Shown one piece after another: positions 43,209-64,000 of a DNA stretch of 64,000 nucleotides. Under the pieces are notes generated by a model. That model was not told where the DNA came from. It searched no databases and saw nothing but the letters and a program-made list of their open reading frames with translations. The stretch is from the IMG/VR virus record IMGVR_UViG_3300044701_000569, positions 124,001 to 188,000 of that record. One strand, given 5' to 3'. Made by a program: the position numbers and the translations under genes. The number at the start of each line of letters is the position of its first letter. The stretch's first letter is position 1.

Positions 43209-44599
43209 GCAAAAGCTATTACAATATTAATGCAGAAAATATTAGAGAAGAACTAGATAAAGTAAGTTGTTCTATGTGTCTTGCTAAATGGACACAAGTT
43301 ACTATGCATTTGCATAACGGACACACACATAGCTGTCATCATCCTGTTCCCCATAAGATTCCTCTAGAAGAACTACTAGAAAGTCCCCACGCACTACATA
43401 ATACACGTTTTAAAATTGAGCAGAGAGAAAAAATGCTTAAAGGTGAACGACCTAAAGAGTGCGACTACTGTTGGAATATAGAAGATTTAGGCAAAGACTA
43501 TCTCAGCGACAGACATTTTAAAAGCGGAGAATATTGGAGTTCAGAATACAAAGATGAAATTCTAAAAGACCCACTACGCAAGGATTTTCTTCCTACATAC
43601 CTAGAAGTTAGTTTTTCAAATGTTTGCAATTTTAGCTGCATGTATTGCAGTCCGCAGATTAGTTCAAAGTGGGTTGACGATGTTAAAAGAAATGGTCCTT
43701 ATGATCTAGGTGATTTTAAACATGCTGATTTAAGTTATTTAGATCAAAAAGGTTTAACTCCTATACCTGAAAGGGAAGACAATCCTTATATTGACGCATT
43801 TTGGGAAATATGGCCTGAGTTATATCAAAAACTTAGAGTGTTTAGAATTACTGGTGGAGAACCTTTACTAAGCAAACATACTTGGAGAATTCTAGAGTAT
43901 GTTCAAGCTAATCCTAATCCTAACATTGAAATAATTATCAATAGTAATTTGTGTGTGCAAGATAATTTTATTGATAGATTAATAAAAATAGGTAATGATC
44001 TTATTACTAATTCTAAGGTAAAAAGATTTGAAATCTACACCAGTGTTGAGAGTGAAGGACGCCAAGCTGAATATATACGTCCAGGATTAGATTACGACAA
44101 ATTTATAAACAATCTAATACGTGTGACTACTGAGATGCCAATGATTAAATGGCGTTCAAAAGTAGTAATTATGGCAACATATAATCTGTTGAGTATACCT
44201 AGATTTAGAAAACTACTTGAATGGTTATTAGAGTACAGAAAAACTCATTCAAACCCTCAATGGAAAAACATTTGGATTGATATTAGTTATCTTCGTTATC
44301 CTAGTTGGCAAACGGTTAGTCTAGCTGACGAAAGTATGCTAAAGATTATAGAATCTGATCTTGAATTTTTAAAAGCAAACGATCAAAATATTGTAGGTTG
44401 GCACGGATTTCAAGATACAGAAATTGAAAAGTTTGCTAGAATGTATAAGTATGCTGTTGAGTCAAGACAGAAGCTAAATCCTATAGAAAAAGAACGTTTT
44501 TACAATTTCTTTAACCAGCATGATCAACGCAAGGGTTTTAATTTTGTAGAGGTGTTTCCTGAGTTGGAAGAATTTTATAATGACTGTAGATCGAAGTAA
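43205..44599 (+). CDS. radical SAM enzyme with an N-terminal Cys/His-rich twitch-like domain
   Basis: CNFSCMYC (CxxxCxxC), ITGGEPLL, INSNL; N-terminal CLAKW...HSCHHP...CDYCW. Confidence 0.92.
   Translation: MSKSYYNINAENIREELDKVSCSMCLAKWTQVTMHLHNGHTHSCHHPVPHKIPLEELLESPHALHNTRFKIEQREKMLKGERPKECDYCWNIEDLGKDYLSDRHFKSGEYWSSEYKDEILKDPLRKDFLPTYLEVSFSNVCNFSCMYCSPQISSKWVDDVKRNGPYDLGDFKHADLSYLDQKGLTPIPEREDNPYIDAFWEIWPELYQKLRVFRITGGEPLLSKHTWRILEYVQANPNPNIEIIINSNLCVQDNFIDRLIKIGNDLITNSKVKRFEIYTSVESEGRQAEYIRPGLDYDKFINNLIRVTTEMPMIKWRSKVVIMATYNLLSIPRFRKLLEWLLEYRKTHSNPQWKNIWIDISYLRYPSWQTVSLADESMLKIIESDLEFLKANDQNIVGWHGFQDTEIEKFARMYKYAVESRQKLNPIEKERFYNFFNQHDQRKGFNFVEVFPELEEFYNDCRSK
43779..43807 (+). repeat. 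29-nt exact direct repeat, copy 1 (copy 2 at 45148-45176)
   Basis: acaatccttatattgacgcattttgggaa occurs identically in both adjacent rSAM paralogs (encodes NPYIDAFWE). Confidence 0.85.
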
Positions 44600-45917
44600 A
44601 CTTTCAGAATACCATTTAATACATCTAAAGAAAAGTGACGAGATTTCGTCTACTTTCTGTTCTGCTAAATGGCATATGGTTACCCTGCATCTTGCACAGG
44701 GAGAAACTCATAGTTGTTACCATCCGTGGACACACAAAGTTCCCCTAGAAGAATTAAAAAATAATCCAGGTGCAATACATAATACACTCTTTAAAAAGAG
44801 TCAACGTAAACTTATGCTCAATGGAGAACGTCCTAAAGAGTGTGAATACTGCTGGCGTATGGAAGATTTAGGTAATATCAGTGATAGAATAATTCGTAAT
44901 GCTGAACCTTATGCTAAAAATGACCTAGACACTTTTAAAACATACACTGGCGACGAGGATGTCTACCCGCGCCATGTAGAAGTGAGCTTTAGTACAACCT
45001 GTAATCTTAAATGTTCTTACTGTAATCCTACAGTAAGTTCTAAGTGGCTTGAAGAAGTTAATCAATATGGCGGTTATAAAACAAGTACTGAGTTTAATGA
45101 CTATATCAAACCAGGTAAACCTCTACCATTTATATTAGATAGAGAACACAATCCTTATATTGACGCATTTTGGGAATGGCTACCGGACGCATACCCTCAT
45201 ATGCATGTCCTTCGTGTCACTGGCGGTGAGCCTCTTATGAGTAAACACACGTTTACTCTGCTGGATTACATTGCTGAAAATCCTAATCCTAAACTAGAAG
45301 TTGTAGTTAACTCTAATATGTGTGTGCCTGATAAGCTGATTGATCAAGCTATAGCAGCAGGTAAAAAGATAGTAGAACGTGTGGGTGTATTTAAGATGTT
45401 TGCAAGTCTTGACAGCGTTGGTGCTCAAGCCGAATATCAACGTTACGGTTTAAATTTTGAACAGTTTACAAAAAATGTAAGACGTTTCTTAGATGAAATC
45501 CCCAACAGCAAAGTTTCATTTACTTGCACCTTTAATGTATTCAGTGTTCCTAATGTAAAAGGCTTTATGGAATATATGTATAGTTTACATAAAGATTACG
45601 GTAAGAGAATAAACTTTGACACACCGTATTTGCGTTTTCCACCACATCAGTGTGTACAGATATTGCCAAATGAGTATGTAAAATATTTAGAGGCTGCTGA
45701 AGAATACATGATAGAAAAGTCATTTCCTCAGCTTACAATTGACAAGATTCAACGATTAAAAAGTTATATGACAAATAAAACTTTTACAGAAGAACAGTTA
45801 TCTACGTACAGAAAAGACTTTGTTATATTTGTAGACGAACACGATAAACGCAGAGGAACAAATTTCTTAGAGACTTATCCTGAGCTAAAAGAATTTTACG
45901 AGTTGTGTAATGAATGA
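44580..45917 (+). CDS. radical SAM enzyme with an N-terminal twitch-like domain; tandem paralog of 43205
   Basis: CNLKCSYC, VTGGEPLM, VNSNM; N-terminal CSAKW...HSCYHP...CEYCW. Confidence 0.92.
   Translation: MTVDRSKLSEYHLIHLKKSDEISSTFCSAKWHMVTLHLAQGETHSCYHPWTHKVPLEELKNNPGAIHNTLFKKSQRKLMLNGERPKECEYCWRMEDLGNISDRIIRNAEPYAKNDLDTFKTYTGDEDVYPRHVEVSFSTTCNLKCSYCNPTVSSKWLEEVNQYGGYKTSTEFNDYIKPGKPLPFILDREHNPYIDAFWEWLPDAYPHMHVLRVTGGEPLMSKHTFTLLDYIAENPNPKLEVVVNSNMCVPDKLIDQAIAAGKKIVERVGVFKMFASLDSVGAQAEYQRYGLNFEQFTKNVRRFLDEIPNSKVSFTCTFNVFSVPNVKGFMEYMYSLHKDYGKRINFDTPYLRFPPHQCVQILPNEYVKYLEAAEEYMIEKSFPQLTIDKIQRLKSYMTNKTFTEEQLSTYRKDFVIFVDEHDKRRGTNFLETYPELKEFYELCNE
45148..45176 (+). repeat. 29-nt exact direct repeat, copy 2
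   Basis: Identical to 43779-43807. Confidence 0.85.
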
Positions 45918-46770
45918 AATTTACATTAAATTTTCTAATGACTCGTATATTCAGATAGAATTATTAAAAAATAATTTTGTTGATGAATGGCTAGAAGTTT
46001 TTCAAAAAACTTCTAAATCAAATATTGGAACATTTAGAATAACTCCGCTAGTAGGATTAGAGTATTGCGATAATGAAATTAATAAATCGATAGATCGTCT
46101 TAATGAAATTTTTGCCAAACTTAACTCTTTAACAGGTGTATCTGCCAACATTCCGGTGTTAACAAGACAAAATATATCAAGAAAACTGTGCAATAAAATA
46201 CATCGTATTTTTACAACTCTTGTAAATTCTCAAGGTACAAAGTATAATTTTGGTTCGTCAATTCAACTTAACGGATTAGATTTAAAAAACCATAGAGATT
46301 TAATATATGAAATAAACGACAACATTCATTATGTTGAAAAAATTTTTCATGCTAACTCAGAATTTTTAAAAAATAATCAATCAAATTATGGATTGTTAAA
46401 TTTTAAAAACAAAAAAATAGAAAAAATTAGAAAAGATTATTTTAAATTTTTAACTAATGACACACAGTATGATGTTTTTATAAACGCAAATATTTGCGGC
46501 AAAAGCTATTTAAATTGTTTTTGGGACAATGATATACCAACAAATTATGATATAAAAAACGAAGAAAGTTATTGCGCTGATTTAGAATTTTTTATTCATA
46601 AGCCATCGTTTATTGACCTTATGCAGTATACTGAGTTTACAAACTGGTTACAGAAATATAGTCTTCCAGTTAATAATATAACATCTGGCAGAATGCCTGT
46701 AGGTAAAATAAAGGACAAACTGCTTAAAGATACAGACAGCATAGAAATAAAGAATATCGAATATGCTTAA
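45910..46770 (+). CDS. hypothetical protein, paralog of 53717
   Basis: Shares IH..F, N..IH..E, GK.....F..N, W, G..(P/E)VG.I spacing with 53717..54547; overlaps both neighbours by 8 nt. Confidence 0.65.
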   Translation: MNEIYIKFSNDSYIQIELLKNNFVDEWLEVFQKTSKSNIGTFRITPLVGLEYCDNEINKSIDRLNEIFAKLNSLTGVSANIPVLTRQNISRKLCNKIHRIFTTLVNSQGTKYNFGSSIQLNGLDLKNHRDLIYEINDNIHYVEKIFHANSEFLKNNQSNYGLLNFKNKKIEKIRKDYFKFLTNDTQYDVFINANICGKSYLNCFWDNDIPTNYDIKNEESYCADLEFFIHKPSFIDLMQYTEFTNWLQKYSLPVNNITSGRMPVGKIKDKLLKDTDSIEIKNIEYA

Positions 46771-47719
46771 AAAGATTTGGTTTAAAAAAGATTATGAAAC
46801 TTTTTTTATTACATGGAGTTTACATAACCTATGTAACTTTCGCTGCGACTACTGTCCACCAAATTTAAATAACGGCACTACAAAAAATATTTCATTTAAG
46901 CATGTAGAAACGTTTTTTAACAATCTAAGACAAAAGTTACCAAACAAAAAATTTATATTTGCATTTAGTGGCGGAGAACCAACTCTTCATCCTGAGTTTA
47001 TTGACATGATCAAATATCTTAGCGACAATGGTTGTGAAATATGTATGACCTCAAATGGTAGTAGGAGCATTGATTGGTGGCAACGTGCAGAACCTTATGT
47101 TGATCACTTAGTTTTTAGTTATCATCCTGGTTGGACTAAACCTACAAAGCTAAAAGAAAATATAGATTTTTTAACACAAACTAGTTGGGTAAATCTTGAT
47201 TTGATGATGAATCCTACTCATTGGGACGAAATCATTTCATTAGGTGAATCTTTTAAAGACAAGCCTAATATTGCTGTAACTTACTTGCCAATACAAAAAG
47301 ATTTTGGTAATGGTGCTAATGGTTTAATTGATTACACAGAACAACAGTTAGAATTCCTTAAGAATCCTCCTAATTACTGGGGAAAGTTTCAACCTGCTAA
47401 ACATAAATTAGAAAAATGTAAAGGACAGTTTGGTAGAGGGTTAAAATTTATGGAAACATCTGAAGGAACAAGACAGTTAGATTACAAATATTTAATTGCA
47501 AACGATCTTAATAGATTTAAGGGTTATGAATGTAACCTAGGCATGGAAGGTCTAATTGTTGAAATAAACGGTGATATATACAATGCTTATTGCCATGTAG
47601 GAGGTGTTGTAGGTAATATTTTTACCGGCGAATATAATCTAACAGACACTCCAACTATTTGCCCTGCTAATTATTGTTCCTGTTCAGTTGACATTGAAAT
47701 CTCAAAGAGAAAAATATGA
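46763..47719 (+). CDS. radical SAM enzyme with a C-terminal Cys-rich twitch/SPASM-like domain
   Basis: WSLHNLCNFRCDYC, FSGGEPT, TSNGS; C-terminal CNLGMEGL..EINGD...AYC...CPANYCSCSVD. Confidence 0.92.
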   Translation: MLKKIWFKKDYETFFITWSLHNLCNFRCDYCPPNLNNGTTKNISFKHVETFFNNLRQKLPNKKFIFAFSGGEPTLHPEFIDMIKYLSDNGCEICMTSNGSRSIDWWQRAEPYVDHLVFSYHPGWTKPTKLKENIDFLTQTSWVNLDLMMNPTHWDEIISLGESFKDKPNIAVTYLPIQKDFGNGANGLIDYTEQQLEFLKNPPNYWGKFQPAKHKLEKCKGQFGRGLKFMETSEGTRQLDYKYLIANDLNRFKGYECNLGMEGLIVEINGDIYNAYCHVGGVVGNIFTGEYNLTDTPTICPANYCSCSVDIEISKRKI

Positions 47720-49032
47720 CTAAAAAAAGAGACAGTTTCTGCATAATGCCTTTCATACATCTTCATAATATGAGCAGTGGTCTTATGAAGATGTGCTGTA
47801 TAACAGAAAAGCCAATTGTAGATGATTTTGGTAAAACTGTTTTTATAGGCAATCAGCCTATCAACGAAGTGTGGAACAACAACTTTATGCAGACTGTGCG
47901 CAAGTTTATGCTTGAAGGCAAAGAACTTTCATTATGCAAAGACTGCTATGATGTAGAAGATAGTGGTGGCAAAAGTTTACGTAATGAATATAATGAAAAT
48001 TACAAAGAACAATTTACACAGTTTATTGATGAAGCAAAAACTAATGATGGCAAGATTAAAACGTTTCCACCGTTTATTGAATTAAGAACTGGGAACAACT
48101 GTAATAGTGCTTGCCGTATGTGTAATACTAATGACAGCAGCTTAGTATATAAAGAAAACACAGAAATTCACAAGACTCTAAAATCTAATGGGTTTGATTC
48201 TCGCACAGTAGAACACGGATATAGAATGATGGGAGATCCTGAGAAAATTATTTTTGGTCTACAGGATGATAGAATGCAGACTAGGGTAATGGACTTAGAT
48301 AAGCATTTTGATGAAATAATTGAAAACATACATCATATAAAATTAATTACACTCAGTGGTGGAGAACCTTTCCTATTAGAAAAAACAGCAGTTCTTTTAG
48401 AAGAACTTGCAAACAAGAACCCTAATGTAATTTTATACATTAATACTAACGGATCTATTCTTAGCGATAGATTAATATCTGCTCTAAAGCGTATTGAAGA
48501 AGTTAGAATCTGCGTAAGTCTTGATGGACATGGAGCTATACAAGAGTATATTAGATATCCGCTCAAATGGGAAAAGATTGAAAGAAATATCTATCAATTA
48601 AAATCTTTAACCAAGAAAGGATTTTATCTAAATTTTAATATTACAGTACAAGCACTGAATGTACTCAATCTAGATCCTTTATTAACGATGCTGGTAACTG
48701 ATTTTATTGGACATCATGTTAATCTTTCATTCTTAACAAATCCTACACATTTTGCTGTTCAGCAGTTACCACAGGCTGTAAAAGAACGAGCAGTTGAGCT
48801 TAACAAGGAGTTAGCTAATAAAATAAATTCAGTGCCATCATTGCCTGGTTATTTTACTGAAAACAAAGTAAGACTAGCAGAACGGTTACTTGAATTAAAT
48901 TCTTTTATGCTAGCAGAAACAGCGCCTAATCCTGAAATGTTTGAAAGATTTAAAGCTAACATAAAGATTTATGACTATTACAGAAAACAACAGCTCGCAG
49001 ACTATGCACCAGATTGGATTCCTTTTCTATGA
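47716..49032 (+). CDS. N-terminal twitch-domain radical SAM enzyme
   Basis: CIMPFIHL...MCC...CKDCY..E..G.KS.R; ELRTGNNCNSACRMC; LSGGEPF; INTNGS. Confidence 0.92.
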   Translation: MTKKRDSFCIMPFIHLHNMSSGLMKMCCITEKPIVDDFGKTVFIGNQPINEVWNNNFMQTVRKFMLEGKELSLCKDCYDVEDSGGKSLRNEYNENYKEQFTQFIDEAKTNDGKIKTFPPFIELRTGNNCNSACRMCNTNDSSLVYKENTEIHKTLKSNGFDSRTVEHGYRMMGDPEKIIFGLQDDRMQTRVMDLDKHFDEIIENIHHIKLITLSGGEPFLLEKTAVLLEELANKNPNVILYINTNGSILSDRLISALKRIEEVRICVSLDGHGAIQEYIRYPLKWEKIERNIYQLKSLTKKGFYLNFNITVQALNVLNLDPLLTMLVTDFIGHHVNLSFLTNPTHFAVQQLPQAVKERAVELNKELANKINSVPSLPGYFTENKVRLAERLLELNSFMLAETAPNPEMFERFKANIKIYDYYRKQQLADYAPDWIPFL

Positions 49033-50012
49033 ATAAATTTGTTAGAATAATTAGAGACGGAGAATACACAGACTACACTCCGCAAGATTTAATACACAAC
49101 GATGTAAACAAATTTTCAGGCTGGAAATGTAGTGCAGGTTCTGAAGGTCTGTTTATTGATTGGGACGGTAGTGTGTGGCCTGCTACATGTGAAGTAGGAA
49201 GAAAAAATTATTATCTTGGATCTCTCAAAGATGAACATCCTATTAAACTTTTAAATGAATACATAGATTGCTATCATAATTATTGTCCTTGTTTAGTTGA
49301 AATATATCTTCCTAAATATAAAAGTTCTAAAAACGAACTTAACGAGATTAAGGAAGGTGCAGTAGATTTATCAGATTTTAGTGCAGTAACACGAGCCAGT
49401 AAGTTTGATAGAGATAGAAAATATATCATGTGGGCTTTTGGTCGCAAGTGTAATTTTTCTTGTTCTTATTGCGATGATAACAGTCACAGTAAGCTAGATA
49501 GTGATTTAGTAGAACTAGCAGCAGTTACTAAGGCACTTGGGTATGCTGAACGTTTTAGAGAAGGCAAACCTTTAATGTGGAGTTTTACTGGCGGAGAACC
49601 TACAATTAATCCGTTATTTCTAGGACTAGTAAAGAATTTAAGTAACAAGGGCGACGTTATTACAGTAGCAACTAACGGTAGTGCGCCTAGCGAGTATTAT
49701 GCAGAGTTAGCAAAATATGCTAATATAAATATCAGTGTGCATTTTGAATTTTTAAAGCCAGAAAAACTTCGTCGCATTACAGAATCAATTATATCATCAC
49801 AACCTCATTGGTTTGGATTAAATTTTATGATTATGCCAGGTAAAGCTGAGTTAACATATTCCTATGCATCAATACTATCGGATATACCGAAGTTTAAAGA
49901 AACTGCCACAGTACATTTTGATATTTTAAGAAAAAAGAATACAGGTATATATGAGATATATTCTGAACAGGACATGCAGATAATTAACAAATTAAAGTTG
50001 GGTGAATATTAA
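49029..50012 (+). CDS. radical SAM enzyme with the Cys-rich auxiliary domain moved to the N-terminus (permuted order)
   Basis: N-terminal NKFSGWKCSAGSEGLFIDWDGSVWPATC...CYHNYCPC, then WAFGRKCNFSCSYC, FTGGEPT, ATNGS. ATGA overlap gives start 49029. Confidence 0.9.
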   Translation: MNKFVRIIRDGEYTDYTPQDLIHNDVNKFSGWKCSAGSEGLFIDWDGSVWPATCEVGRKNYYLGSLKDEHPIKLLNEYIDCYHNYCPCLVEIYLPKYKSSKNELNEIKEGAVDLSDFSAVTRASKFDRDRKYIMWAFGRKCNFSCSYCDDNSHSKLDSDLVELAAVTKALGYAERFREGKPLMWSFTGGEPTINPLFLGLVKNLSNKGDVITVATNGSAPSEYYAELAKYANINISVHFEFLKPEKLRRITESIISSQPHWFGLNFMIMPGKAELTYSYASILSDIPKFKETATVHFDILRKKNTGIYEIYSEQDMQIINKLKLGEY

Positions 50013-50013
50013 T

Positions 50014-51297
50014 ATGAATCAAGAAGATCTAAAGAATTCAAAATCGTTTTGCATTATGCCATGGGTGCATTTAGCAACAGAGCCTAGCGGCGATGTAAAA
50101 ATCTGTTGTTTGTCAAATAAGAGAATTCGTTCAACTGATAGAAATCATAACCTTGGCCAAGATGATGTTATTGAGATTTTTAACAGCGATCAAATTAGAC
50201 GTAATAGAAAAAACATGCTAGAGGGCGTTAGAATACCTGAGTGTGTGCATTGTTGGAAGGAAGAAGACACTGGCGGACTGTCTCAAAGGCAGGGAGTGAC
50301 AGAGCAGTGGTTAAGAGAATATCCAGAACTGTTAGACATGATTGAAGAAGCTGTAAAGAACGATTATCATGTTAATCATGCTCCTATGTACTATGACTTT
50401 AGATTTGGAAATCTTTGCAATTTAAAGTGTCGCAGTTGCGGATCTTTAAATAGTACACAAATTAACAAGGAATACACAGAGCTAAAAGAAAAATATCCTA
50501 GCACTACATTCTTTTTTGACAGCGGAGAGAAGTACGAAACTCTTAATGAGTGGTATAAGACAGAACAGTTTCACAACAACGTATACAACAATATTGATAA
50601 AATACGAAAAATATATGTTACCGGCGGCGAGCCAACCCTTATCGAACAAAATTATAAGATAATGGAAAAGATTGTAGAAATTGGCAGAGCTAAAGAAGTT
50701 ACAATTATGTTTAACACTAACATGACTAATCTACGTGATGATTTTTACGAGTTAATTGTTAAATTTAAAAATGTAGAAATGTGTATATCAATTGAAGGCT
50801 ACGGTGAAATACAAGAATATTTGAGATATCCGGCTAATTGGAAACAGATAGACAAAAACATTAGACGACTAGCTAGCCTACCTCCGCATGTTCAAATTTT
50901 TGCAGTACCTGTAATCCAAAGTGTTAACTTAGAATACACAGTTGATTTTTGGAAATATATTGAAGACATTAATAATGAATATGGCTACTACAGAGTAAGA
51001 TTGTTACCAATTCTTTTAGACAGTCCGGCTATGAGTGATCTAGGAATATTGCCACTTGAGTATAAATTGAAATGTTTAGCTAAACTAGAAGAATATGTAA
51101 AGTCAGCCAAGTATATAATGGAAGATCCTCACTTTGTAGGTAGGTATAACAATATCAAATCAAAATGTGAAAAAGATCTTTATAATCCAAAGCTGTTAAC
51201 TCAGTTTAAAACATTTACAGATATACTTGACAAAAATAGGGGTCAGAGTTTACAATTAGTAAATCCTTCGCTTTATGAGATATTAGAAAATGTCTAA
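50014..51297 (+). CDS. N-terminal twitch-domain radical SAM enzyme
   Basis: CIMPWVHL..EPSG..KICC...CVHCWKEE..G..S.R; DFRFGNLCNLKCRSC; VTGGEPT; FNTNMT. ATG 50014 preferred over GTG 50002. Confidence 0.92.
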   Translation: MNQEDLKNSKSFCIMPWVHLATEPSGDVKICCLSNKRIRSTDRNHNLGQDDVIEIFNSDQIRRNRKNMLEGVRIPECVHCWKEEDTGGLSQRQGVTEQWLREYPELLDMIEEAVKNDYHVNHAPMYYDFRFGNLCNLKCRSCGSLNSTQINKEYTELKEKYPSTTFFFDSGEKYETLNEWYKTEQFHNNVYNNIDKIRKIYVTGGEPTLIEQNYKIMEKIVEIGRAKEVTIMFNTNMTNLRDDFYELIVKFKNVEMCISIEGYGEIQEYLRYPANWKQIDKNIRRLASLPPHVQIFAVPVIQSVNLEYTVDFWKYIEDINNEYGYYRVRLLPILLDSPAMSDLGILPLEYKLKCLAKLEEYVKSAKYIMEDPHFVGRYNNIKSKCEKDLYNPKLLTQFKTFTDILDKNRGQSLQLVNPSLYEILENV

Positions 51298-52504
51298 CAA
51301 AGATACTTGGTGCATATATCCGTTCGTGCATCTAGCTACTTTTACTAACGGTGATATTACTCCTTGTTGTGTTGCGAGATCTTACAAGGGATTAAATCTT
51401 CACGACATTACTCTAGAACAAGCGTGGAATCATCCTAGTGTAAAAGATGTTCGACAGCGCATGTTAAACGGAGAAACAGTTAGAAATTGTCAAGACTGTT
51501 ACAATGCAGAACAGCACGGAGTTGACAGTCACAGAACCAGCAGCAACAGAGTGTTTGAAAAAGAACACGGATTAACTAAAGAACACTTTGTCTCTAGTGA
51601 ACTAGATATTTCCAAATTGATTACTCTTGATCTTCGATTAGGTAATACGTGTAATCTAAAATGTGTTATGTGTCGTCCTAACGAAAGTCATAAGTGGTAT
51701 GATGATATATTAGAACTCAAACAAATTGATCTTCCTAAGATTGTTTCTGATGATATTTCTTATAAGGCAAATTATAATCGTAACGACTATAATTGGGTTA
51801 ACAACAAACTTTTTTGGGATAATATTGATACAATACTTCCCAACATACGAGAGTTTATTTTTGGTGGCGGCGAACCTTTCATGTTGAAAGAAGTCAAAGC
51901 ACTGCTTCAAAAAGCAGTTGATATGGATCTTGCAAAAAATCTTACAATTAGATTCCACACCAACGGAACTTATTTAACAGCCAACGACTTTAAGTTATTA
52001 CAGCATTTTAAAAGAATCCAATTAATGTTCAGCATTGATGGAGTTGATGAAGTAAATTATTTTTTGAGATTTCCTGCAGAATGGAAAAAAGTTATTGATA
52101 CTATTAATGAGAATGAAAAGTACGGTAAAAATATTGAATCTTACATTCTTTGTAGTCTAACAGGCGTAAGTGCATTCTATTTAGATCAACTCTATGACTT
52201 TGTTTATGAACAGAAATGGAATAAGTTATCCATTGAAAATATAATTTTAGGTAGAGTACATAATCCGGTTTACCTTAATCCTCAAACTCTTGATGATAAC
52301 AGAAAACAATTGATTAAAAACAAATGGGAAAATATTCTAATCAAGTATCCCTCTGTGTCAAAAACTATTATAGAAAATTTAAATTGGATTCTAGGAGAAA
52401 ATACTGAAAGCTCTATAGATGCTACTATAAGCTATGTAAATAGTCTTTGTAAGATTAGATCAATTGACAAAGATATACTAAGAGAGTTTATCAATGGCAA
52501 TTAA
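51290..52504 (+). CDS. N-terminal twitch-domain radical SAM enzyme
   Basis: CIYPFVHL...NG..TPCC...CQDCY..E..G..SHR; DLRLGNTCNLKCVMC; FGGGEPF; FHTNGT. Confidence 0.92.
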   Translation: MSNKDTWCIYPFVHLATFTNGDITPCCVARSYKGLNLHDITLEQAWNHPSVKDVRQRMLNGETVRNCQDCYNAEQHGVDSHRTSSNRVFEKEHGLTKEHFVSSELDISKLITLDLRLGNTCNLKCVMCRPNESHKWYDDILELKQIDLPKIVSDDISYKANYNRNDYNWVNNKLFWDNIDTILPNIREFIFGGGEPFMLKEVKALLQKAVDMDLAKNLTIRFHTNGTYLTANDFKLLQHFKRIQLMFSIDGVDEVNYFLRFPAEWKKVIDTINENEKYGKNIESYILCSLTGVSAFYLDQLYDFVYEQKWNKLSIENIILGRVHNPVYLNPQTLDDNRKQLIKNKWENILIKYPSVSKTIIENLNWILGENTESSIDATISYVNSLCKIRSIDKDILREFINGN

Positions 52505-53720
52505 TCTTTGGTATGATTATGTGAGCAGCAATCAAATTGTAAATAATTTGATTTCAAAAGATTTAAGAAATGAGTATCTTTTAGATTCAACACGACGATC
52601 TGGTAATAACTTTTTACGTTATAATGCAGAACTTCCTAATTTTTTAAAAAATGCAGGAATACCATTTTCGTTAAATTTCTCTCAAGCAATACCTTATCTT
52701 AAAGATTACAATTGGAATGAAACTCAGTATCTTCCAATAGAATTTAATTTTTTTAAATCTGCAGAACCTAAGGATTTAAACTTTGTAGATTCTTTTTTCC
52801 TAAAAAACGGTAAGGCAAATACAGAGTTTTTTGTTTGGTTTCCGCACGAAGCTCCAGATAAAGTTTCTACTGAATATTTTGAACTTCTTAATAAAAATTA
52901 TCCCCATATACCTATTCGTTTTGCACACGGCAATTTGAGAACTCCTAAATGGATTGCGGATCAAGATTTTATAAATTATCGAGCTTTTGATTATTTTTGG
53001 TGGGTACAGCAACAGTTTCCTAGAACAGTCTTAGATAAGAATAAAGAAGAAGTACATACCTTTACGTTCTATAATCATAGAAGTCGATCATTTAGAGCTA
53101 TTCCATATTATTCACTTTTAACTGCTAACAAACTAGTTGGTGCAAAAGCTACCTATCACGGTTACTCGGATAACAGCGAGAACTCAACAGACATTGTTAA
53201 TTATTCAATACAAAGAGAACAAGGAGAGATACCTTGCGAATATTTAAACTTTACTCAGGATGTTAAATTTTTAGATTGGTTAAATTTAAATTCGTCTAGC
53301 AGTTTTAATTTTCAACATTTTGATTTTGTAAATTTGTCTTTACACAGTGATTCATACTTAGATTTTTCAACAGAAACATATCCTTTTGAAAAAGATGATC
53401 ATTTTTTTGTTACAGAAAAAACATATAGACCAATTGCTAGCGGCTGCATATTTTTAACACTTTCACAACCAGGAATGCTTAAATATCTAAAATCAAAAGG
53501 CATTCAAACTTTTGATGATCTATTTGATGAAAGTTATGACACAACTAGCCACTGGTACAACAGATGGAAGATAATAGAAAAAAATATTGACATCTGGTTA
53601 AGTCTTGGTAAAGAAGGCCGTAAAGATTATTATAAGAAAAGTTTTGATAAATTGGTTCATAATCAAAATGTTTTTTATTCAAGAGATTTCGCAGAAGAAA
53701 TAAGGAAGCTATTCCAATGA
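52494..53720 (+). CDS. putative GT-B glycosyltransferase with a GT10 (fucosyltransferase)-like TEK motif; paralog of 59453
   Basis: YLDFSTET......FFVTEKTYRPIASG..F...SQPG.L..L...G..TF..LFDESYD resembles the GT10 donor-binding motif (F.FENS..dYiTEK...a...P...G). Confidence 0.5.
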   Translation: MAINLWYDYVSSNQIVNNLISKDLRNEYLLDSTRRSGNNFLRYNAELPNFLKNAGIPFSLNFSQAIPYLKDYNWNETQYLPIEFNFFKSAEPKDLNFVDSFFLKNGKANTEFFVWFPHEAPDKVSTEYFELLNKNYPHIPIRFAHGNLRTPKWIADQDFINYRAFDYFWWVQQQFPRTVLDKNKEEVHTFTFYNHRSRSFRAIPYYSLLTANKLVGAKATYHGYSDNSENSTDIVNYSIQREQGEIPCEYLNFTQDVKFLDWLNLNSSSSFNFQHFDFVNLSLHSDSYLDFSTETYPFEKDDHFFVTEKTYRPIASGCIFLTLSQPGMLKYLKSKGIQTFDDLFDESYDTTSHWYNRWKIIEKNIDIWLSLGKEGRKDYYKKSFDKLVHNQNVFYSRDFAEEIRKLFQ

Positions 53721-54547
53721 AAATGGAATTTTATAACAAAGATAATCTCACAGGGGTAATTGAAATAAAAGTGTTTGAAACCCAAACAGCAAAAACCTTT
53801 GTTGATGTTATTTCTAAAACTAACAAAACATCATCAACTACTAATCATAGTATTAGCAGAAATAAGATAGAAATTATTAACGATTTTCTTCGAATGAAAG
53901 AAGTTGTTAAACAGTATAATGATACCTCTTATGACAGAAAAATAGATGTTGATTTAGAAAAAGATTTTAGTTTACACAAACTTTTTGATTTACACGAACA
54001 CTTTGAACATTTAGGAGAACGCAAACGTTCTAATGATCCTACACTTAGTATTAAAGCATACAACGAAGTTATCAACATAGGTTGTGAATTAAACGGATTA
54101 ATTCATAAATTAGAAGGTAACTTATATGGAGGACAATGGTTACAGGCCCTATATAAAAAGCCAGACATTGTAAGAATTCCGTTAACCAAAGAAATAATAT
54201 CAGAAGCAGTGCCAGGTTATAGAAAAGATGTCCTATATGTTGGTTATGGAGAAACAGGCAAAAACATGGCACACATATTTCAAATGAATGAGCACGAATT
54301 ATTAGAAAGAAAGATGGTCCAACCTCAAAGATATATTTTAAGTGAATTCTTTTTGCCATTTAATGACATGCCTTTAGATTATGAAGGATATAAGAAATGG
54401 TGCATTAAACATGATGCAGCTGAAAAAGGTTACGACTACGAAAATCCTATTTGGTATGGAAAATGGGAAGTAGGCCAAATAGTTAAAAAATCGTTTAACA
54501 ACTTATCAAGTTTCCCTCAGTACGATACTATAAGGTTCGTTATATGA
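53717..54547 (+). CDS. hypothetical protein, paralog of 45910
   Basis: LFDLHEHFE, NGLIHKLE, GYGETGKNMAHIFQMNE, W, GKWEVGQI. Confidence 0.65.
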   Translation: MKMEFYNKDNLTGVIEIKVFETQTAKTFVDVISKTNKTSSTTNHSISRNKIEIINDFLRMKEVVKQYNDTSYDRKIDVDLEKDFSLHKLFDLHEHFEHLGERKRSNDPTLSIKAYNEVINIGCELNGLIHKLEGNLYGGQWLQALYKKPDIVRIPLTKEIISEAVPGYRKDVLYVGYGETGKNMAHIFQMNEHELLERKMVQPQRYILSEFFLPFNDMPLDYEGYKKWCIKHDAAEKGYDYENPIWYGKWEVGQIVKKSFNNLSSFPQYDTIRFVI

Positions 54548-56882: not shown

Positions 56883-57939
56883 CATACGCCAGGTTCATAT
56901 AGAACTAACAGACAAGTGCCAAGCACAATGTCCTATGTGTGCTAGAAATTTTCACGGGGGTCCTACTAGACCGTTTATAAAAAACGGTGACATTTCTATT
57001 GAACAGTTTAAGGAATGGTTTCCAAAAGCATTTTTATCTCAGCTAACAAACTTTTATAGTTGTGGGAATTATGGTGATCCTGCTTTTGCAAAAGATTGTT
57101 TAGAAATATATTCATATGTTCGAGAATGTAATCCAACTACACGTCTAGCTCTGCATACAAACGGAGGAATGAGGAATCCAGATTGGTGGAGTAAACTAGC
57201 AAAGGTTTTAGGATCTTCTGCTAACTCAGAAGTTGTCTTTGCTGTAGACGGATTTAAAGACAAGCACGAATTATATCGCAGAAATACAAATTTTGATAAA
57301 GTTATAGAAAACATGACAGCATTTATCGAAGCTGGCGGCCGAGCAAGGGTTGACAGTCTAGTATTTGCACACAACGAGCACGATGTAGAGGAACTAGAAC
57401 AATATTTAAATAATCTAGGTGTTGATAATGTAAATTTTGTTAGTACAACACGATTTTATGAAATGGATTCTTTTCCTGTACACGATTTAGACAATCGTCA
57501 TGTGTATGATTTAAAACCAGCACAGCGAATAGAATTTAAAAGAAATCCTAATAATGCTTTGGATCAATTAGTAGACCAACAGTTTAGAGATAAAGTAATT
57601 GGTGCTGCTGAAATATCACCTCTTTGTGTATCTGAACAGGGTATATACGTTGATCCTTACGGAAACATTCTGCCCTGCTGCTGGATAGGCAGTGATTATC
57701 TAGAAGAACCAATAGAAGAAATTTTGCCAATACATTATTTAAGAAATTTAAGTGTACAAAATACAAAGAACATGCTTAAAGATATAACAGTACCTAATTG
57801 TCAAGATAAGGTACTTTACAATTCGTCGGATGTTTTGTGGTCTAAACTGTCAGATTATTGGACAGGAGAAAACAAATGTATGACCTGTGTAAAGGTCTGT
57901 TCAAAGGCTTTGTATAATAGTAGAAAGAATAATGAATAA
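56866..57939 (+). CDS. radical SAM enzyme with a C-terminal twitch/SPASM-like domain
   Basis: HIELTDKCQAQCPMCAR; CGNYGDP in place of GGEP; HTNGG; C-terminal PLC..EQGIYVDPYG.ILPCCW...CMTCVKVC. GTG start after GAGGA. Confidence 0.9.
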   Translation: MQKISNIRQVHIELTDKCQAQCPMCARNFHGGPTRPFIKNGDISIEQFKEWFPKAFLSQLTNFYSCGNYGDPAFAKDCLEIYSYVRECNPTTRLALHTNGGMRNPDWWSKLAKVLGSSANSEVVFAVDGFKDKHELYRRNTNFDKVIENMTAFIEAGGRARVDSLVFAHNEHDVEELEQYLNNLGVDNVNFVSTTRFYEMDSFPVHDLDNRHVYDLKPAQRIEFKRNPNNALDQLVDQQFRDKVIGAAEISPLCVSEQGIYVDPYGNILPCCWIGSDYLEEPIEEILPIHYLRNLSVQNTKNMLKDITVPNCQDKVLYNSSDVLWSKLSDYWTGENKCMTCVKVCSKALYNSRKNNE

Positions 57940-58915
57940 TTTTCAAAATATACCCTGGCAAAACATAAAGCAGTTTGGCCAACAAACAATGCTACAGAAT
58001 CCTCTGTTCACTGTGTCTTGGATACTAGCAAGATTCTGTAATTACAACTGTTCTTATTGTTGGCCTTATGCTAGATCCAGCACTCCCGACCATCAAACTT
58101 TAGAAACTTATATTAAAACAATGGATAGTATCAAAGAGCAGGCTCGAAATAATGGATTTACAAACTTTCATTTTAGTTTTAGCGGAGGAGAACCGACTGC
58201 TTATAAACAGTTTGGAGACCTTATTGAACATTATGCAAGTGATGCATTACCTGACTATCAAAGTATACACATGACAACTAACTTATCGCCAGGTAGTAAG
58301 TGGTGGAGTAAATGGTTAGAAGCTACTAGTACATTACATAGAAAAAGTATTACAGCTAGTTTCCATGCTGAACATGCACAAGAACAGGAATTTGGAGATA
58401 AGTGTCTACAATTAATGAATGCCGGAGTATTTGTAACCATAAATCAAGTTATGGTTCCTTCGCAGTTTTATGATCTTTATGCTAGGTGCGAACGATTTGT
58501 AGAAAGAGGTATTAATGTTACTCTTAAACCGCAGAGTGATCCTACTGCTAGTTTTGTAGTTAACGGTTATACTGAAGATCAAATACATAAGATGCAGACA
58601 GGATTCCCACAGAAGTGGTTAGGTGAAGAGGTTTCACAAGTAGAACTTCAGGACTATGAGGGTAATAAATATTACATCGATCAAGCTGAACGGTTTAACG
58701 CATTTGGATTTAATAAATTTAAAGGTTGGCTTTGCAATGCAGGATACCAAGGTATTGTAATAAGAGAAAATGAAGTAAAAAGAAGTTATAGTTGTAAAGA
58801 TGTTCCGATTGGTACACTTGAAAACGGTTTTACAATTTTTGATAGCCCAACAGTATGTATTAGTGAATCGTGTGTTAGTAGCGCAGACAGCAAAATTCCT
58901 AAAAGGAGAAATTAA
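57932..58915 (+). CDS. radical SAM enzyme with a C-terminal Cys-rich auxiliary domain
   Basis: WILARFCNYNCSYC, FSGGEPT, MTTNLS; C-terminal GWLCNAG...SYSC...CISESCVSSAD. Confidence 0.9.
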   Translation: MNNFQNIPWQNIKQFGQQTMLQNPLFTVSWILARFCNYNCSYCWPYARSSTPDHQTLETYIKTMDSIKEQARNNGFTNFHFSFSGGEPTAYKQFGDLIEHYASDALPDYQSIHMTTNLSPGSKWWSKWLEATSTLHRKSITASFHAEHAQEQEFGDKCLQLMNAGVFVTINQVMVPSQFYDLYARCERFVERGINVTLKPQSDPTASFVVNGYTEDQIHKMQTGFPQKWLGEEVSQVELQDYEGNKYYIDQAERFNAFGFNKFKGWLCNAGYQGIVIRENEVKRSYSCKDVPIGTLENGFTIFDSPTVCISESCVSSADSKIPKRRN

Positions 58916-61251: not shown

Positions 61252-62660
61252 CTGATAAATTTTGGTGTAATTCAGGTAACAAGCAGTTAGAAAAATACCA
61301 ACAAGAAATTGAAACAAAGTCCGGTACACCAACCTTTTGCGTATTACCATGGATACATTTTGCTACACGCCCTAATGGAGATATGAGACTTTGCTGTTCA
61401 GCTAACGCTAGCGGCGCCGGCCAAGATCATGAAGTTGGGTTGGTAAAAATGGAACACGGTCGTCCTGCAAACTTTGGTCGTGAAACTCCTATGCAAGCAT
61501 GGAACAACGACTATATGAAAAGTGTTAGAACAACTATGATAAAAGGTGAAATACCATCAAGTTGTTCTAAGTGTTTTAGAGAAGAAGAAAAAGGCGTAGT
61601 TAGTAAACGTGTTTGGGAAACAGGCACTTGGATGCTAGATGGTATTGATCTTAAGGAATTAATTGAAAATACAGACGAAGATGGTATTGTACCAGAACGT
61701 TTGCAGTATCTTGATTTAAGACTAGGACACACTTGTAATTTAAAATGTGTTATGTGTAGTCCTCATGATAGTAGTAGATGGGTAGATGACCATAAAAAGA
61801 TTTATCCTTTATTTCAAAATGACTCGCTTAAAAAGCAAATGAGTTGGGACGCGGGATCTTTTAATAATTATTGGTATGAAAATCCTGTATTTTGGGAACA
61901 GATGTATGCACAGATACCCTATCTAAAGCAGGTTTACTTTGCAGGCGGCGAACCTTTAATGATAAAGGAACACAAGAATCTTTTAAAAGAAATTGTACGC
62001 CAAGGTTATGCTGATAAGATTTTAATTAGATACAATTCTAACGGATTATTACTAGACGAAGAAACATTAGAGTTATGGAAAAATTTTAAGAAAGTAAAAT
62101 TTGCTGTGAGTATTGATGATATTACTGACAGAAACTATTACATTAGATATCCGTCTGATTGGGATAGATTAGAAAAGAATATGCATATTCTTGATAATAC
62201 GCCTAGCAACGTACAAGTAAGTATTGCTACAGCTATTCAAATCCTAAACATAAAAACTCTACCTGAATTAGCAAAGTGGAAAATTACACAGAATTTTAAA
62301 AAGATAAATTTTGAAAATGTTTATGAAGGTATACAAGCCGGCGGCGGAATAGTAAACATGCACTTATTGTATATACCTACTTTTTTAAGTATACGATGCT
62401 TGCCTAAAGAGGACAAGCAAGAAGTAAGAAAAATATTTGAAGATTTTAGATTATGGCTTCTAGAAAACTATACACAAGATTCAGACTTTTGGAATGTAAA
62501 TCCGTATGGGTGGAAGCGTTGGCAGGCTGTTTTAGATTTTATGGACGGTGAAGATCATACACACGAACTACCGGCATTTAAAGAATACATACATAAACTA
62601 GATTCTATTAGAAACACAGATTTTAAAACTATTTTTCCGTTATTGAGTCACTTAGTATGA
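61248..62660 (+). CDS. N-terminal twitch-domain radical SAM enzyme
   Basis: CVLPWIHF..RPNG..RLCC...CSKCF.EE..G..SKR; DLRLGHTCNLKCVMC; FAGGEPL; YNSNG. Confidence 0.93.
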   Translation: MTDKFWCNSGNKQLEKYQQEIETKSGTPTFCVLPWIHFATRPNGDMRLCCSANASGAGQDHEVGLVKMEHGRPANFGRETPMQAWNNDYMKSVRTTMIKGEIPSSCSKCFREEEKGVVSKRVWETGTWMLDGIDLKELIENTDEDGIVPERLQYLDLRLGHTCNLKCVMCSPHDSSRWVDDHKKIYPLFQNDSLKKQMSWDAGSFNNYWYENPVFWEQMYAQIPYLKQVYFAGGEPLMIKEHKNLLKEIVRQGYADKILIRYNSNGLLLDEETLELWKNFKKVKFAVSIDDITDRNYYIRYPSDWDRLEKNMHILDNTPSNVQVSIATAIQILNIKTLPELAKWKITQNFKKINFENVYEGIQAGGGIVNMHLLYIPTFLSIRCLPKEDKQEVRKIFEDFRLWLLENYTQDSDFWNVNPYGWKRWQAVLDFMDGEDHTHELPAFKEYIHKLDSIRNTDFKTIFPLLSHLV

Positions 62661-63655
62661 AACAACTAGCAAGAGTTATTACTACACAAGATCCTACTCT
62701 TTTAGATGTGAGATTTTGGCCTACCGATATTTGTAACTTTAGTTGTAACTATTGTTTTCCTGGCAGTGTTCTTAACAAGTATCGTTATCCTAAAAATGTC
62801 AACACTGTAATAAAGAATTTTAGAATACTGTTTGATGCATATATGAAACTGCATAACAAGAAAAAGTTTAAGATAAACATAGTAGGGGGAGGTGAACCTA
62901 CATTATGGCCGCATCTCTCAGAGTTCTGTCAAGGCATTAAAGAAACACATCCAGTTGAAATACAATTGACTTCTAACGGCAGTAGAACTCTTAGATGGTG
63001 GGAAGAAAATAGTTTATATGTTGATAAAGTAGTATTAAGTTGTCATTACAAAGATGTTGACATTAATAATTTTATTCAAGTAGCTGATTATATTTTTGGA
63101 AGAGGTACAGACATAGGTGCTCTAATGCTTATGGATGCTACGGCTTGGGATACATGTGTTGAATTAATTGAACAAATGAGAAGCAGTAAACATCCTTGGA
63201 TTATACAAGCAAAAGAAGTTGTAGATGCTCCAGGATATGATATAAGAAACTATACAGCAGAACAGCTCAGTTATTTTAAACAACCTTTTAAACGTGTTCC
63301 GGATACTAATTGGATTATTAATAACATACATAGATTTAGAGTACACGAAAGTGTATCGCTTTATGATGATAATTCTGTAGAGCTAGCACTACCTAACTAT
63401 TACATAGTTAATAAATTAAATCAATGGAAGGGTTGGAATTGTAATGTGGCTCTTGAAAATCTAGTTATTACTTATGACGGTACAGTTACAGGTAGTTGTC
63501 AAGAACCTGTGTTTTCTAATTCTAATTTAAATATGTTTGCAGAAGATTTTGAAGAAAAATTTAGCGAAGAATCGCTAAGTTTAAAAACATTAATTTGTCC
63601 AAGAATGAATTGTAGCTGCCAACCAGATACGCACATTACAAAATGGAAGTCTTAG
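62657..63655 (+). CDS. radical SAM enzyme with a C-terminal Cys-rich auxiliary domain
   Basis: FWPTDICNFSCNYC, VGGGEPT, TSNGSR..WW; C-terminal GWNCNVA...YDG.V.GSC...CPRMNCSCQPD. Confidence 0.92.
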   Translation: MKQLARVITTQDPTLLDVRFWPTDICNFSCNYCFPGSVLNKYRYPKNVNTVIKNFRILFDAYMKLHNKKKFKINIVGGGEPTLWPHLSEFCQGIKETHPVEIQLTSNGSRTLRWWEENSLYVDKVVLSCHYKDVDINNFIQVADYIFGRGTDIGALMLMDATAWDTCVELIEQMRSSKHPWIIQAKEVVDAPGYDIRNYTAEQLSYFKQPFKRVPDTNWIINNIHRFRVHESVSLYDDNSVELALPNYYIVNKLNQWKGWNCNVALENLVITYDGTVTGSCQEPVFSNSNLNMFAEDFEEKFSEESLSLKTLICPRMNCSCQPDTHITKWKS

Positions 63656-64000
63656 TCAGCGGAATGTCTGCTGCACAAGTACACCAATTTCTATCACAAA
63701 TTATTTCTGATGCTGGAATACGAAAATCTCCTTTATAGATATTTCCTAAACTACCGCCAACCCTGCAAGTAGCTCGGTGTACTTCACCATCCCAGTTAAT
63801 CATTAGACTTTCAATACCTGCACTGCATTTCCAATCTTTAAATTTATTCATATGCAGTTTTATTATATCATTAGCATGATATAGATCTTTGTTGTCAACT
63901 ATGCAATTTTCTTTTGCTGTTGCGTTGTTTTCTAATAGATATTTTAAGTCATTAGGTTGATATCTCATGTCGTCGAACCAATCGTGATCACCTTCGGTCC
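63636..64000 (-). CDS. 3' end of a probable radical SAM gene (C-terminal Cys-rich auxiliary domain); 5' part lies beyond the window
   Basis: Frame stays open to the window edge (TEGDHDWFDDMRYQ...), so the track's Met is internal. NKFKDWKCSAGIESLMINWDGEVHRATC...CDRNWCTCAAD matches the auxiliary domain of 46763, 62657 and 49029. Confidence 0.8.
   Translation of the reverse strand, partial: TEGDHDWFDDMRYQPNDLKYLLENNATAKENCIVDNKDLYHANDIIKLHMNKFKDWKCSAGIESLMINWDGEVHRATCRVGGSLGNIYKGDFRIPASEIICDRNWCTCAADIPLTKTSIL

What the first reader, a model, noticed from the sequence alone, without database searches (positions are those of the whole stretch)
49029..50012. Domain-permuted radical SAM enzyme
Seen: the Cys-rich module NKF.GWKCSAG.E.L.I.WDG.V..ATC...C...C.C is C-terminal in 46763, 57932, 62657 and the partial 63636 gene, but forms the N-terminus of 49029, ahead of CNFSCSYC. 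Its closest match in the window is the convergent gene at 63636 (NKFKDWKCSAGIESLMINWDGEVHRATC). Inference: circular permutation or module swap from recombination between tandem rSAM genes, showing how the cluster makes new architectures.
Basis: partly seen in the sequence, partly recalled or inferred. Interest (0 to 1): 0.6.

Follow-up and report, generated by a model that had tools for sequence, protein, structure and literature searches.

The report
Circularly permuted radical SAM enzyme family
The gene really does encode a radical SAM enzyme whose iron-sulfur "twitch" module sits in front of the catalytic core instead of behind it, but this order is an old, conserved family shared by predatory bacteria (Bdellovibrionota) and large phages, not something made by recombination inside this phage's gene cluster.

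Summary
Observation confirmed. ORF 49029-50012 (327 aa) has the Cys-rich module at aa 24-100 and the CX3CX2C radical SAM core at aa 128-320. Four paralogues in the cluster (46763, 57932, 62657, 63636) carry the same two modules in the opposite order. The protein aligns end to end across the junction of a doubled paralogue (z=56). Profile comparisons give E 3e-43 for the core and 1.3e-30 for the module.

About 50 full-length homologues (28-79% identity) share the permuted order. They form one clade (100/99 support), and the core and module trees agree, so there was no module swap. Cellular members found were all in Bdellovibrionota genomes, inside a syntenic multi-rSAM cassette that the phage also carries. 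Independent metagenome contigs span the gene, so it is not a mis-assembly.

The target is not a member: 36 bits against a cutoff of 170, and no module similarity. It is a second, independent N-terminal-twitch lineage. Natural split forms (core ORF plus module ORF) also exist.

The substrate is unknown. This is a new variant of a known kind, of moderate interest.

The parts
49029..50012 (+). Permuted radical SAM gene (327 aa, P0001): twitch-like module, then linker, then rSAM core
   Evidence: AF2 model with pLDDT 94.1 and pTM 0.89 as one compact fold
49035..49097 (+). aa 3-23: beta-hairpin plus short helix that precedes the module. It corresponds to w46763 aa 228-246, so it marks the new N-terminus created in the loop after the core.
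   Evidence: doubled-sequence alignment; DSSP E5-9, E12-16, H18-23
49098..49328 (+). aa 24-100: Cys-rich twitch-like module. Invariant residues are W32, C34, G37, G47, C54, G64, C81, C86, C88 and K96. It is the presumed site of one auxiliary Fe-S cluster.
49329..49409 (+). aa 101-127: new linker joining the old C-terminus to the old N-terminus. It is variable in length across the family.
   Evidence: AF2 H101-104, E119-122, H125-128
49410..49988 (+). aa 128-320: radical SAM partial (beta/alpha)6 barrel core. It carries C141-x3-C145-x2-C148 (nt 49449-49472) and GGEP 188-191.
46763..47719 (+). Canonical-order paralogue (core then module), 318 aa. It is the best core match, and its orthologue lies directly upstream of the permuted gene in L003 and in many Bdellovibrionota loci.
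57932..58915 (+). Canonical-order paralogue, 327 aa, divergent
62657..63655 (+). Canonical-order paralogue, 332 aa, divergent
63636..64000 (-). 3' part of the canonical-order paralogue (296 aa in full, runs beyond the window). It is the best module match (42% identity).
47716..49032 (+). Upstream neighbour, an NF033640 N_Twi_rSAM member (438 aa) with its own, unrelated N-terminal twitch/SPASM domain
   Evidence: 316 bits against cutoff 170
50002..51297 (+). Downstream neighbour, an NF033640 N_Twi_rSAM member (431 aa)
   Evidence: 343 bits

Best explanation
ORF 49029-50012 encodes a member of an old, conserved and so far unnamed family of radical SAM enzymes. These are circular permutants of a canonical 'core then twitch-like module' family distantly related to STM4011. 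The chain starts in what is, in canonical relatives, the loop between the last core helix and the hairpin leading into the Cys module. It runs through the module (five invariant Cys, C34/C54/C81/C86/C88, presumably holding one auxiliary [4Fe-4S] cluster). A new linker of about 27 aa follows, and then the SAM-cleaving (beta/alpha)6 core with C141x3C145x2C148. The permutation arose once, or at most twice, long before this phage. The most likely routes are duplication, fusion and truncation of tandem copies, or gene fission followed by re-fusion. The permuted gene travels as one gene of a syntenic cassette of five or more radical SAM genes (several N_Twi_rSAM genes, one canonical short rSAM and the permuted rSAM). 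That cassette is found in Bdellovibrionota chromosomes and in large freshwater/marine phages. Shown: the permutation, its conservation, its monophyly, the synteny and a confident single-domain-like fold. Inferred: Fe-S binding by the module, enzymatic activity, the direction of the change (canonical to permuted) and the route of origin. Substrate and product are unknown. The nearest structural cores act on nucleotides, nucleotide-sugars or peptides.
Confidence: 0.88

Rival explanations
1. One reading: the permuted gene was created recently inside this phage's tandem rSAM array, by recombination or a module swap that took the module from the 63636-type gene and a core from another paralogue.
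For: The best in-window module match is w63636 and the best core match is w46763. The cluster holds 13 rSAM genes in tandem.
Against: Orthologues with the same order are far closer (79% overall, 84% in the module) than any in-window paralogue (42% and 25-33%). The permuted clade includes Bdellovibrionota genes at 28-35% identity. The module and core trees give the same subclades. The related phage-like contig L003 and the bacterial locus L007 have the gene in the same cassette position.
Confidence: 0.02
2. Assembly artefact: two genes were joined by a chimeric contig.
For: The window comes from a metagenome-derived viral contig, and the repetitive paralogues could mislead an assembler.
Against: A contig from a different study (X6, 8,092 bp) covers 47500-50441 with 6 substitutions and no gaps. 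X9 (49168-50201) and X7 (49234-49585) bridge the module-core junction. Dozens of independent assemblies encode the same architecture.
Confidence: 0.01
3. The gene is simply a divergent member of the known N-terminal-twitch family NF033640 (N_Twi_rSAM), like its two neighbours, and not an independent permutation.
For: The domain order is the same, the gene is flanked by NF033640 genes, and it hits NF033640 weakly (36.5 bits).
Against: The hit covers only the core and lies far below the 170-bit cutoff. hhalign of the module against the N_Twi alignment gives probability 0.07%, against 99.85% for the canonical C-terminal module. The core HMM scores 58-122 bits on canonical short rSAMs but 8-24 bits on N_Twi proteins. 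The family also lacks the roughly 100-aa C-terminal helical extension of N_Twi proteins (327 aa against 404-470 aa).
Confidence: 0.04
4. Reversed direction: the module-first order is ancestral for this group, and the 'canonical' short rSAMs are the derived permutants.
For: The trees are unrooted, and the split between the permuted clade and the rest is the deepest branch. The co-occurring N_Twi family is also N-terminal.
Against: Canonical order is taxonomically far wider (Vibrio, Photobacterium, Ruegeria, Clostridium, Actinomycetota and others), whereas the permuted order was found only in Bdellovibrionota and phages. The nearest curated family (STM4011, NF038073) and all solved SPASM/twitch enzymes are C-terminal. 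The canonical w63636 family alone has more than 2,000 relatives.
Confidence: 0.05

Closest known systems
NCBIfam NF033640, 'N_Twi_rSAM' (twitch domain-containing radical SAM protein with N-terminal twitch)
   Same: The architecture is the same: a Cys-rich twitch/SPASM-like domain in front of the CX3CX2C core. The two families sit in the same gene clusters, with seven members next to the target.
   Different: The target scores 36.5 bits against a cutoff of 170, and only over the core. Its module has no detectable similarity to the N_Twi N-terminal domain. It lacks the long C-terminal extension. Its nearest relatives are canonical-order enzymes. It is therefore an independent route to the same domain order.
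NCBIfam NF038073, STM4011 family radical SAM protein (canonical order), and the uncharacterised short rSAMs of the window (46763, 63636 etc.)
   Same: Both modules are homologous. The core and the Cys module share the spacing C-x19-C...C-x4-C-x-C...K.
   Different: The order of the two modules is reversed. The target's hit to NF038073 is 22 bits against a cutoff of 200, over the module only. The window's canonical paralogues also fall below the cutoff (62.5 bits at best), so they are only distant relatives of STM4011.
Twitch/SPASM radical SAM enzymes with solved structures (BtrN 4m7s, SkfB 6efn, CteB 5wgg, anSME 4k37, BlsE 7vob)
Viperin / PFL-activase / QueE-type minimal rSAM cores
   Different: Those enzymes have no auxiliary-cluster module, and sequence identity is only 10-19%.

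Membership tests
Radical SAM superfamily (PF04055) | CX3CX2C motif ligating the SAM-binding [4Fe-4S] cluster | tested here: met
   C141-N-F-S-C145-S-Y-C148, invariant in 46 homologues
Radical SAM superfamily (PF04055) | Profile score above Pfam's gathering threshold | tested here: met
   50.5 bits against 29.5
Radical SAM superfamily (PF04055) | Partial (beta/alpha)6 TIM-barrel fold | tested here: met
SPASM/twitch domain (PF13186 and the BtrN-type twitch) | Profile score above the gathering threshold | tested here: not met
   17.7 bits against 21.5, E 0.0045, aa 34-70
SPASM/twitch domain (PF13186 and the BtrN-type twitch) | Cys-x(n)-hairpin-Cys followed by a Cys pair, forming a small domain around one auxiliary cluster | tested here: inconclusive
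SPASM/twitch domain (PF13186 and the BtrN-type twitch) | Position C-terminal to the rSAM core | tested here: not met
   The module is at aa 24-100 and the core at aa 128-320
SPASM/twitch domain (PF13186 and the BtrN-type twitch) | Binds an auxiliary Fe-S cluster | not testable with these tools
   Needs Fe/S analysis and EPR or Moessbauer spectroscopy of purified protein
NF033640 N_Twi_rSAM | Whole-protein score above the curated cutoff (170 bits) | tested here: not met
   36.5 bits, core only, aa 119-229. The neighbours score 300-397 bits.
NF033640 N_Twi_rSAM | Homologous N-terminal twitch domain | tested here: not met
   hhalign probability 0.07%; no BLAST or HMM hit
NF038073 STM4011 family | Score above the cutoff (200 bits) and core-then-module order | tested here: not met
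   22 bits over the module only, and the order is reversed
Circular permutant of the canonical short rSAM family | Both segments homologous in swapped order, with a single alignment crossing the junction of a duplicated reference | tested here: met
   P0001 aa 3-319 against w46763 aa 228-318 followed by 1-199, z=56. The alignment crosses the junction in 4 of 4 canonical paralogues and 0 of 3 N_Twi genes. hhalign E 3e-43 and 1.3e-30.
Circular permutant of the canonical short rSAM family | Same three-dimensional arrangement of the segments | not testable with these tools
The only support is the high-confidence compact model (pTM 0.89).

The most novel reading that the evidence does not exclude
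The same two-module radical SAM enzyme exists in nature in three connectivities: fused core-module, split into two genes, and fused module-core. If so, the auxiliary-cluster 'twitch' module would be a detachable unit whose attachment point is free. The permuted enzyme, usually encoded right after a canonical paralogue, would then be a dedicated step in an undescribed pathway of five or more rSAM enzymes, shared by predatory Bdellovibrionota and jumbo phages and making an unknown product.
Probability: 0.3. Interest if true: 0.65.

Novelty: new variant of a known kind. Interest (0 to 1): 0.42.

Why it matters
Radical SAM enzymes with SPASM/twitch auxiliary-cluster domains are a very large class with mostly unknown chemistry, and the domain is normally described as a C-terminal extension. 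This is a clean natural case in which a well-conserved family has the module moved to the N-terminus by circular permutation. Split two-gene forms occur in sister lineages, and a second, unrelated N-terminal-twitch family (NF033640) sits in the same cassette. Together these give a natural test bed for how the auxiliary cluster is positioned relative to the active site. They also show that annotation pipelines which expect a C-terminal SPASM/twitch will label such proteins only as 'radical SAM'. The finding further flags a syntenic multi-rSAM cassette shared between Bdellovibrionota and large freshwater phages, whose product is unknown.

Tried and rejected
- Megablast of 46000-52000 against the phage collection found nothing. 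tblastn of P0001 there gave one weak core hit, so no isolated-phage relative was available.
- Literature searches for N-terminal twitch/SPASM, circular permutation of radical SAM, and Bdellovibrio/phage rSAM clusters returned nothing relevant (one search was a malformed query). The one exception is a remark that a marine T4-like viral genome carries 12 rSAM genes (PMC5332604).
- Foldseek of the isolated module gave no significant hit. The best E was 0.93, although rSAM SPASM/twitch enzymes fill the top ranks.
- The ESM-Atlas feature search returned only unnamed viral rSAM clusters.
- Pfam and NCBIfam scans of the non-rSAM genes of the cluster gave no families apart from a weak methyltransferase hit, so there is no functional clue.
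- BLAST of the cluster's ORFs against the other loci showed that the rSAM genes are the only ORFs with matches in the bacterial loci. Non-rSAM matches were confined to the phage-like contigs L003 and L006, and no conserved precursor peptide or partner was seen.
- I considered that the split forms might be the sister group of the permuted clade, which would make them a direct intermediate. The tree instead places L009/L010 with the w63636 canonical clade and leaves L006 unresolved, so they show only that fission is tolerated.
- Taxonomy of genomes reached through loci was hidden.

Full report
**What is there.** The window is bases 124001-188000 of a 357,559-bp viral record rated complete by CheckV. 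The same stretch occurs in freshwater and lake metagenomes from 13 studies. Genome positions 167205-189850 hold 13 ORFs with a CX3CX2C motif.

The target, 49029-50012 (+), is 327 aa (P0001). Its ATG overlaps the stop of the upstream gene as ATGA, and homologues start at the same residue. Pfam places Radical_SAM at aa 137-251 (50.5 bits) and a sub-threshold SPASM hit at aa 34-70 (17.7 bits against 21.5).

**Check of the observation.** The Cys-rich motif is N-terminal here. It is C-terminal in 46763, 57932, 62657 and the convergent 63636 gene, which is 296 aa in full.
- BLASTP of P0001 aa 1-110 hits the C-terminal ends of those four: w63636 at 42% identity (E 6e-15) and w46763 at 36% (E 1e-11).
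- BLASTP of aa 111-327 hits their N-terminal cores.
- In the classical test for circular permutation, P0001 aa 3-319 aligns in one piece across the junction of w46763 joined to itself (aa 228-318, then 1-199). The score is 285 against 187 for a single copy, z=56 against shuffles.
- The alignment crosses the junction for all four canonical paralogues and for none of three N_Twi genes.
- Profile-profile comparison gives E 3e-43 for the core (P0001 aa 128-327 against canonical aa 11-225) and E 1.3e-30 for the module (aa 8-105 against aa 231-318).

Only the loop at w46763 aa 200-227 is missing, and that is where the new termini lie. P0001 aa 101-127 is the new linker.

Both neighbours of the target (47716, 50002), four more window genes (43205, 44580, 51290, 61248) and 64519-65850 (minus strand, just outside the window) are full-length members of NCBIfam NF033640, 'N_Twi_rSAM'. 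This is a curated family defined by an N-terminal twitch domain, and these genes score 300-397 bits against a cutoff of 170. Four of them pass Pfam's SPASM threshold at their N-terminus. An N-terminal twitch is therefore a catalogued architecture and is the majority type in this cluster.

P0001 is not a member of that family:
- It scores 36.5 bits, and only over the core.
- hhalign of its module against an N_Twi alignment gives probability 0.07%.
- HMMs built from the permuted family score 58-122 bits (core) and 25-89 bits (module) on canonical short rSAMs. On N_Twi proteins they score 8-24 bits and nothing, respectively.

P0001 thus represents a second, independent lineage with the module in front.

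**Not a local invention.** The word search found about 50 proteins of 314-350 aa that cover at least 90% of P0001 at 28-79% identity. All have the module first. Invariant across 46 sequences are:
- in the module: W32, C34, G37, G47, C54, G64, C81, C86, C88 and K96;
- in the core: C141, C145, C148, GGEP188-191, N216, S236 and H238.

Canonical relatives keep the same C-x19-C...C-x4-C-x-C...K pattern.

A maximum-likelihood tree of the re-concatenated core plus module puts 30 of 31 permuted proteins in one clade (100/98). The window gene sits in a 14-member phage-type subclade nested among bacterial members. A second tree, which adds further loci and leaves out the two longest-branched paralogues (57932, 62657) and some redundant rows, gives the same result (26 permuted rows, 100/99). 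The one outlier, P0063, is a long branch. Monophyly of all permuted proteins is not rejected (difference in lnL 0.04, p-AU 0.51).

Separate module and core trees recover the same subclades. The window's module is 84% identical to that of orthologue P0012, against 42% for the best in-window paralogue. So there has been no module swap and no recent recombination.

**Where it lives.** In species-representative genomes, every high-scoring permuted ORF lay in Bdellovibrionota MAGs (Bdellovibrionales, Bacteriovoracaceae, Pseudobdellovibrionaceae, Oligoflexia). Homologues in Vibrio, Photobacterium, Ruegeria, Arenicellales, Clostridium, Actinomycetota and others were all in canonical order. At least 12 of 31 relatives of one such genome carry a full-length permuted gene. 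In at least nine loci a canonical-order gene lies immediately upstream of the permuted one. The same is true in the 375-kb phage-like contig L003.

Gene order is conserved between the bacterial locus L007 and the window:
- L007: N_Twi, canonical, fused double N_Twi, permuted, N_Twi.
- Window: N_Twi, N_Twi, an ORF of unknown family (45910-46770, 286 aa), canonical, N_Twi, permuted, N_Twi, N_Twi.

The rSAM genes are the only ORFs with matches in the bacterial loci; non-rSAM matches were confined to the phage-like contigs L003 and L006. The phage therefore carries a ready-made multi-rSAM cassette. The direction of transfer was not tested.

**Artefact excluded.** A contig from another study (X6, 8,092 bp) covers 47500-50441 with six substitutions and no gaps. 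Contigs from X9 and X7 bridge the module-core junction.

**Structure.** AlphaFold2 with the 46-sequence alignment gives one compact fold (pLDDT 94.1, pTM 0.89). Its elements in order are a hairpin, a helix, the module hairpin (E40-43/E48-50), the linker, and six beta-alpha units.
- For enzymes with a C-terminal twitch or SPASM domain, the aligned model range is only 129-327, as expected for a permutant.
- Foldseek's top ranks and a PDB profile search point the same way (CteB, anSME, BtrN, SkfB), but none is significant.

The twitch assignment is therefore likely but not proven.

**How it probably arose.** This part is inference. Two routes fit the data.
- Duplication, fusion and truncation. 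This is supported by the conserved tandem of a canonical gene followed by the permuted gene.
- Fission followed by re-fusion. Natural split forms make this plausible:
  - a 250-aa core ORF overlapping a 118-aa module ORF in two Bdellovibrionota species (L009, L010);
  - a 225-aa plus 95-aa pair right after the permuted P0063 in L006;
  - a 201-aa plus 153-aa pair in Photobacterium phosphoreum.

The split forms are not sister to the permuted clade. They show that fission is tolerated, not that they are the intermediate.

**How it probably works.** This part is also inference. The core cleaves SAM at the C141/C145/C148 cluster. The module's five invariant Cys hold an auxiliary [4Fe-4S] cluster near the open side of the barrel, as in BtrN-type enzymes. 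The substrate is unknown. One related contig (L006) has nucleotide-sugar genes beside its rSAM cluster, and the best core matches include nucleotide and nucleotide-sugar enzymes (viperin, BlsE, DesII). This is a weak lead only.

**Novelty.** I found no curated model that the family passes and no paper in the searched library. The general idea of an N-terminal twitch rSAM is already catalogued as NF033640. I therefore rate this a new variant of a known kind, of moderate interest.

Noticed in passing
window 43205-44599, 44580-45917, 47716-49032, 50002-51297, 51290-52504, 61248-62660 (+); genome 188519-189850 (-), just outside the window: Seven paralogues of NCBIfam NF033640 (N_Twi_rSAM, 300-397 bits) lie in one cluster with five other rSAM genes. 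One marine T4-like viral genome with 12 rSAM genes has been remarked on before (PMC5332604).
   Followed up: partly
L009 3295-4047 and 4044-4400; L010 3187-3939 and 2834-3190 (-); L006 10939-11616 and 11606-11893; L082 5962-6567 and 6489-6950: Natural split versions of the canonical enzyme exist: a core-only ORF followed by an overlapping ORF that encodes only the Cys module. They are conserved in two Bdellovibrionota species and also occur in a phage-like contig and in Photobacterium phosphoreum.
   Followed up: partly
L007 7222-10014 and 13764-16634 (-): ORFs of 879-930 aa and 956 aa in a bacterial contig look like two N_Twi rSAM enzymes fused in tandem.
   Followed up: no
L005 10001-11008 and 11009-12004; L039 5962-6978 and 6981-7991: Two permuted paralogues lie in tandem in some Bdellovibrionota loci, so the permuted gene has itself duplicated.
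   Followed up: no
window 15256-30651 (+): A single open reading frame of 5,131 aa lies upstream of the rSAM cluster, among large ORFs of 1,112-1,144 aa. It was not analysed.
   Followed up: no
window 53717-54547, 54544-55374, 55367-56197 (+): Three tandem ORFs of exactly 276 aa each sit inside the rSAM cluster, with no Pfam or NCBIfam family. Whether they are similar to one another was not tested.
   Followed up: no
window 56866-57939 (+): This rSAM gene (357 aa) has a different C-terminal Cys-rich tail (CVSEQGIYVDPYGNILPCC...), which looks like a third type of SPASM-like module in the cluster. It has a homologue in L006.
   Followed up: no
whole window / G000: Cellular homologues of the permuted gene were found only in Bdellovibrionota, and the cassette is syntenic with theirs. 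This freshwater jumbo phage may infect that phylum or have exchanged genes with it. This is speculative and the host was not tested.
   Followed up: no
window 49453-49470 and 49917-49937: In runs X7 and X8, contigs touch these two short stretches with 19 unrelated letters between them (read-laying table 5c). No joint was listed. They are probably short chance or paralogous matches.
   Followed up: no
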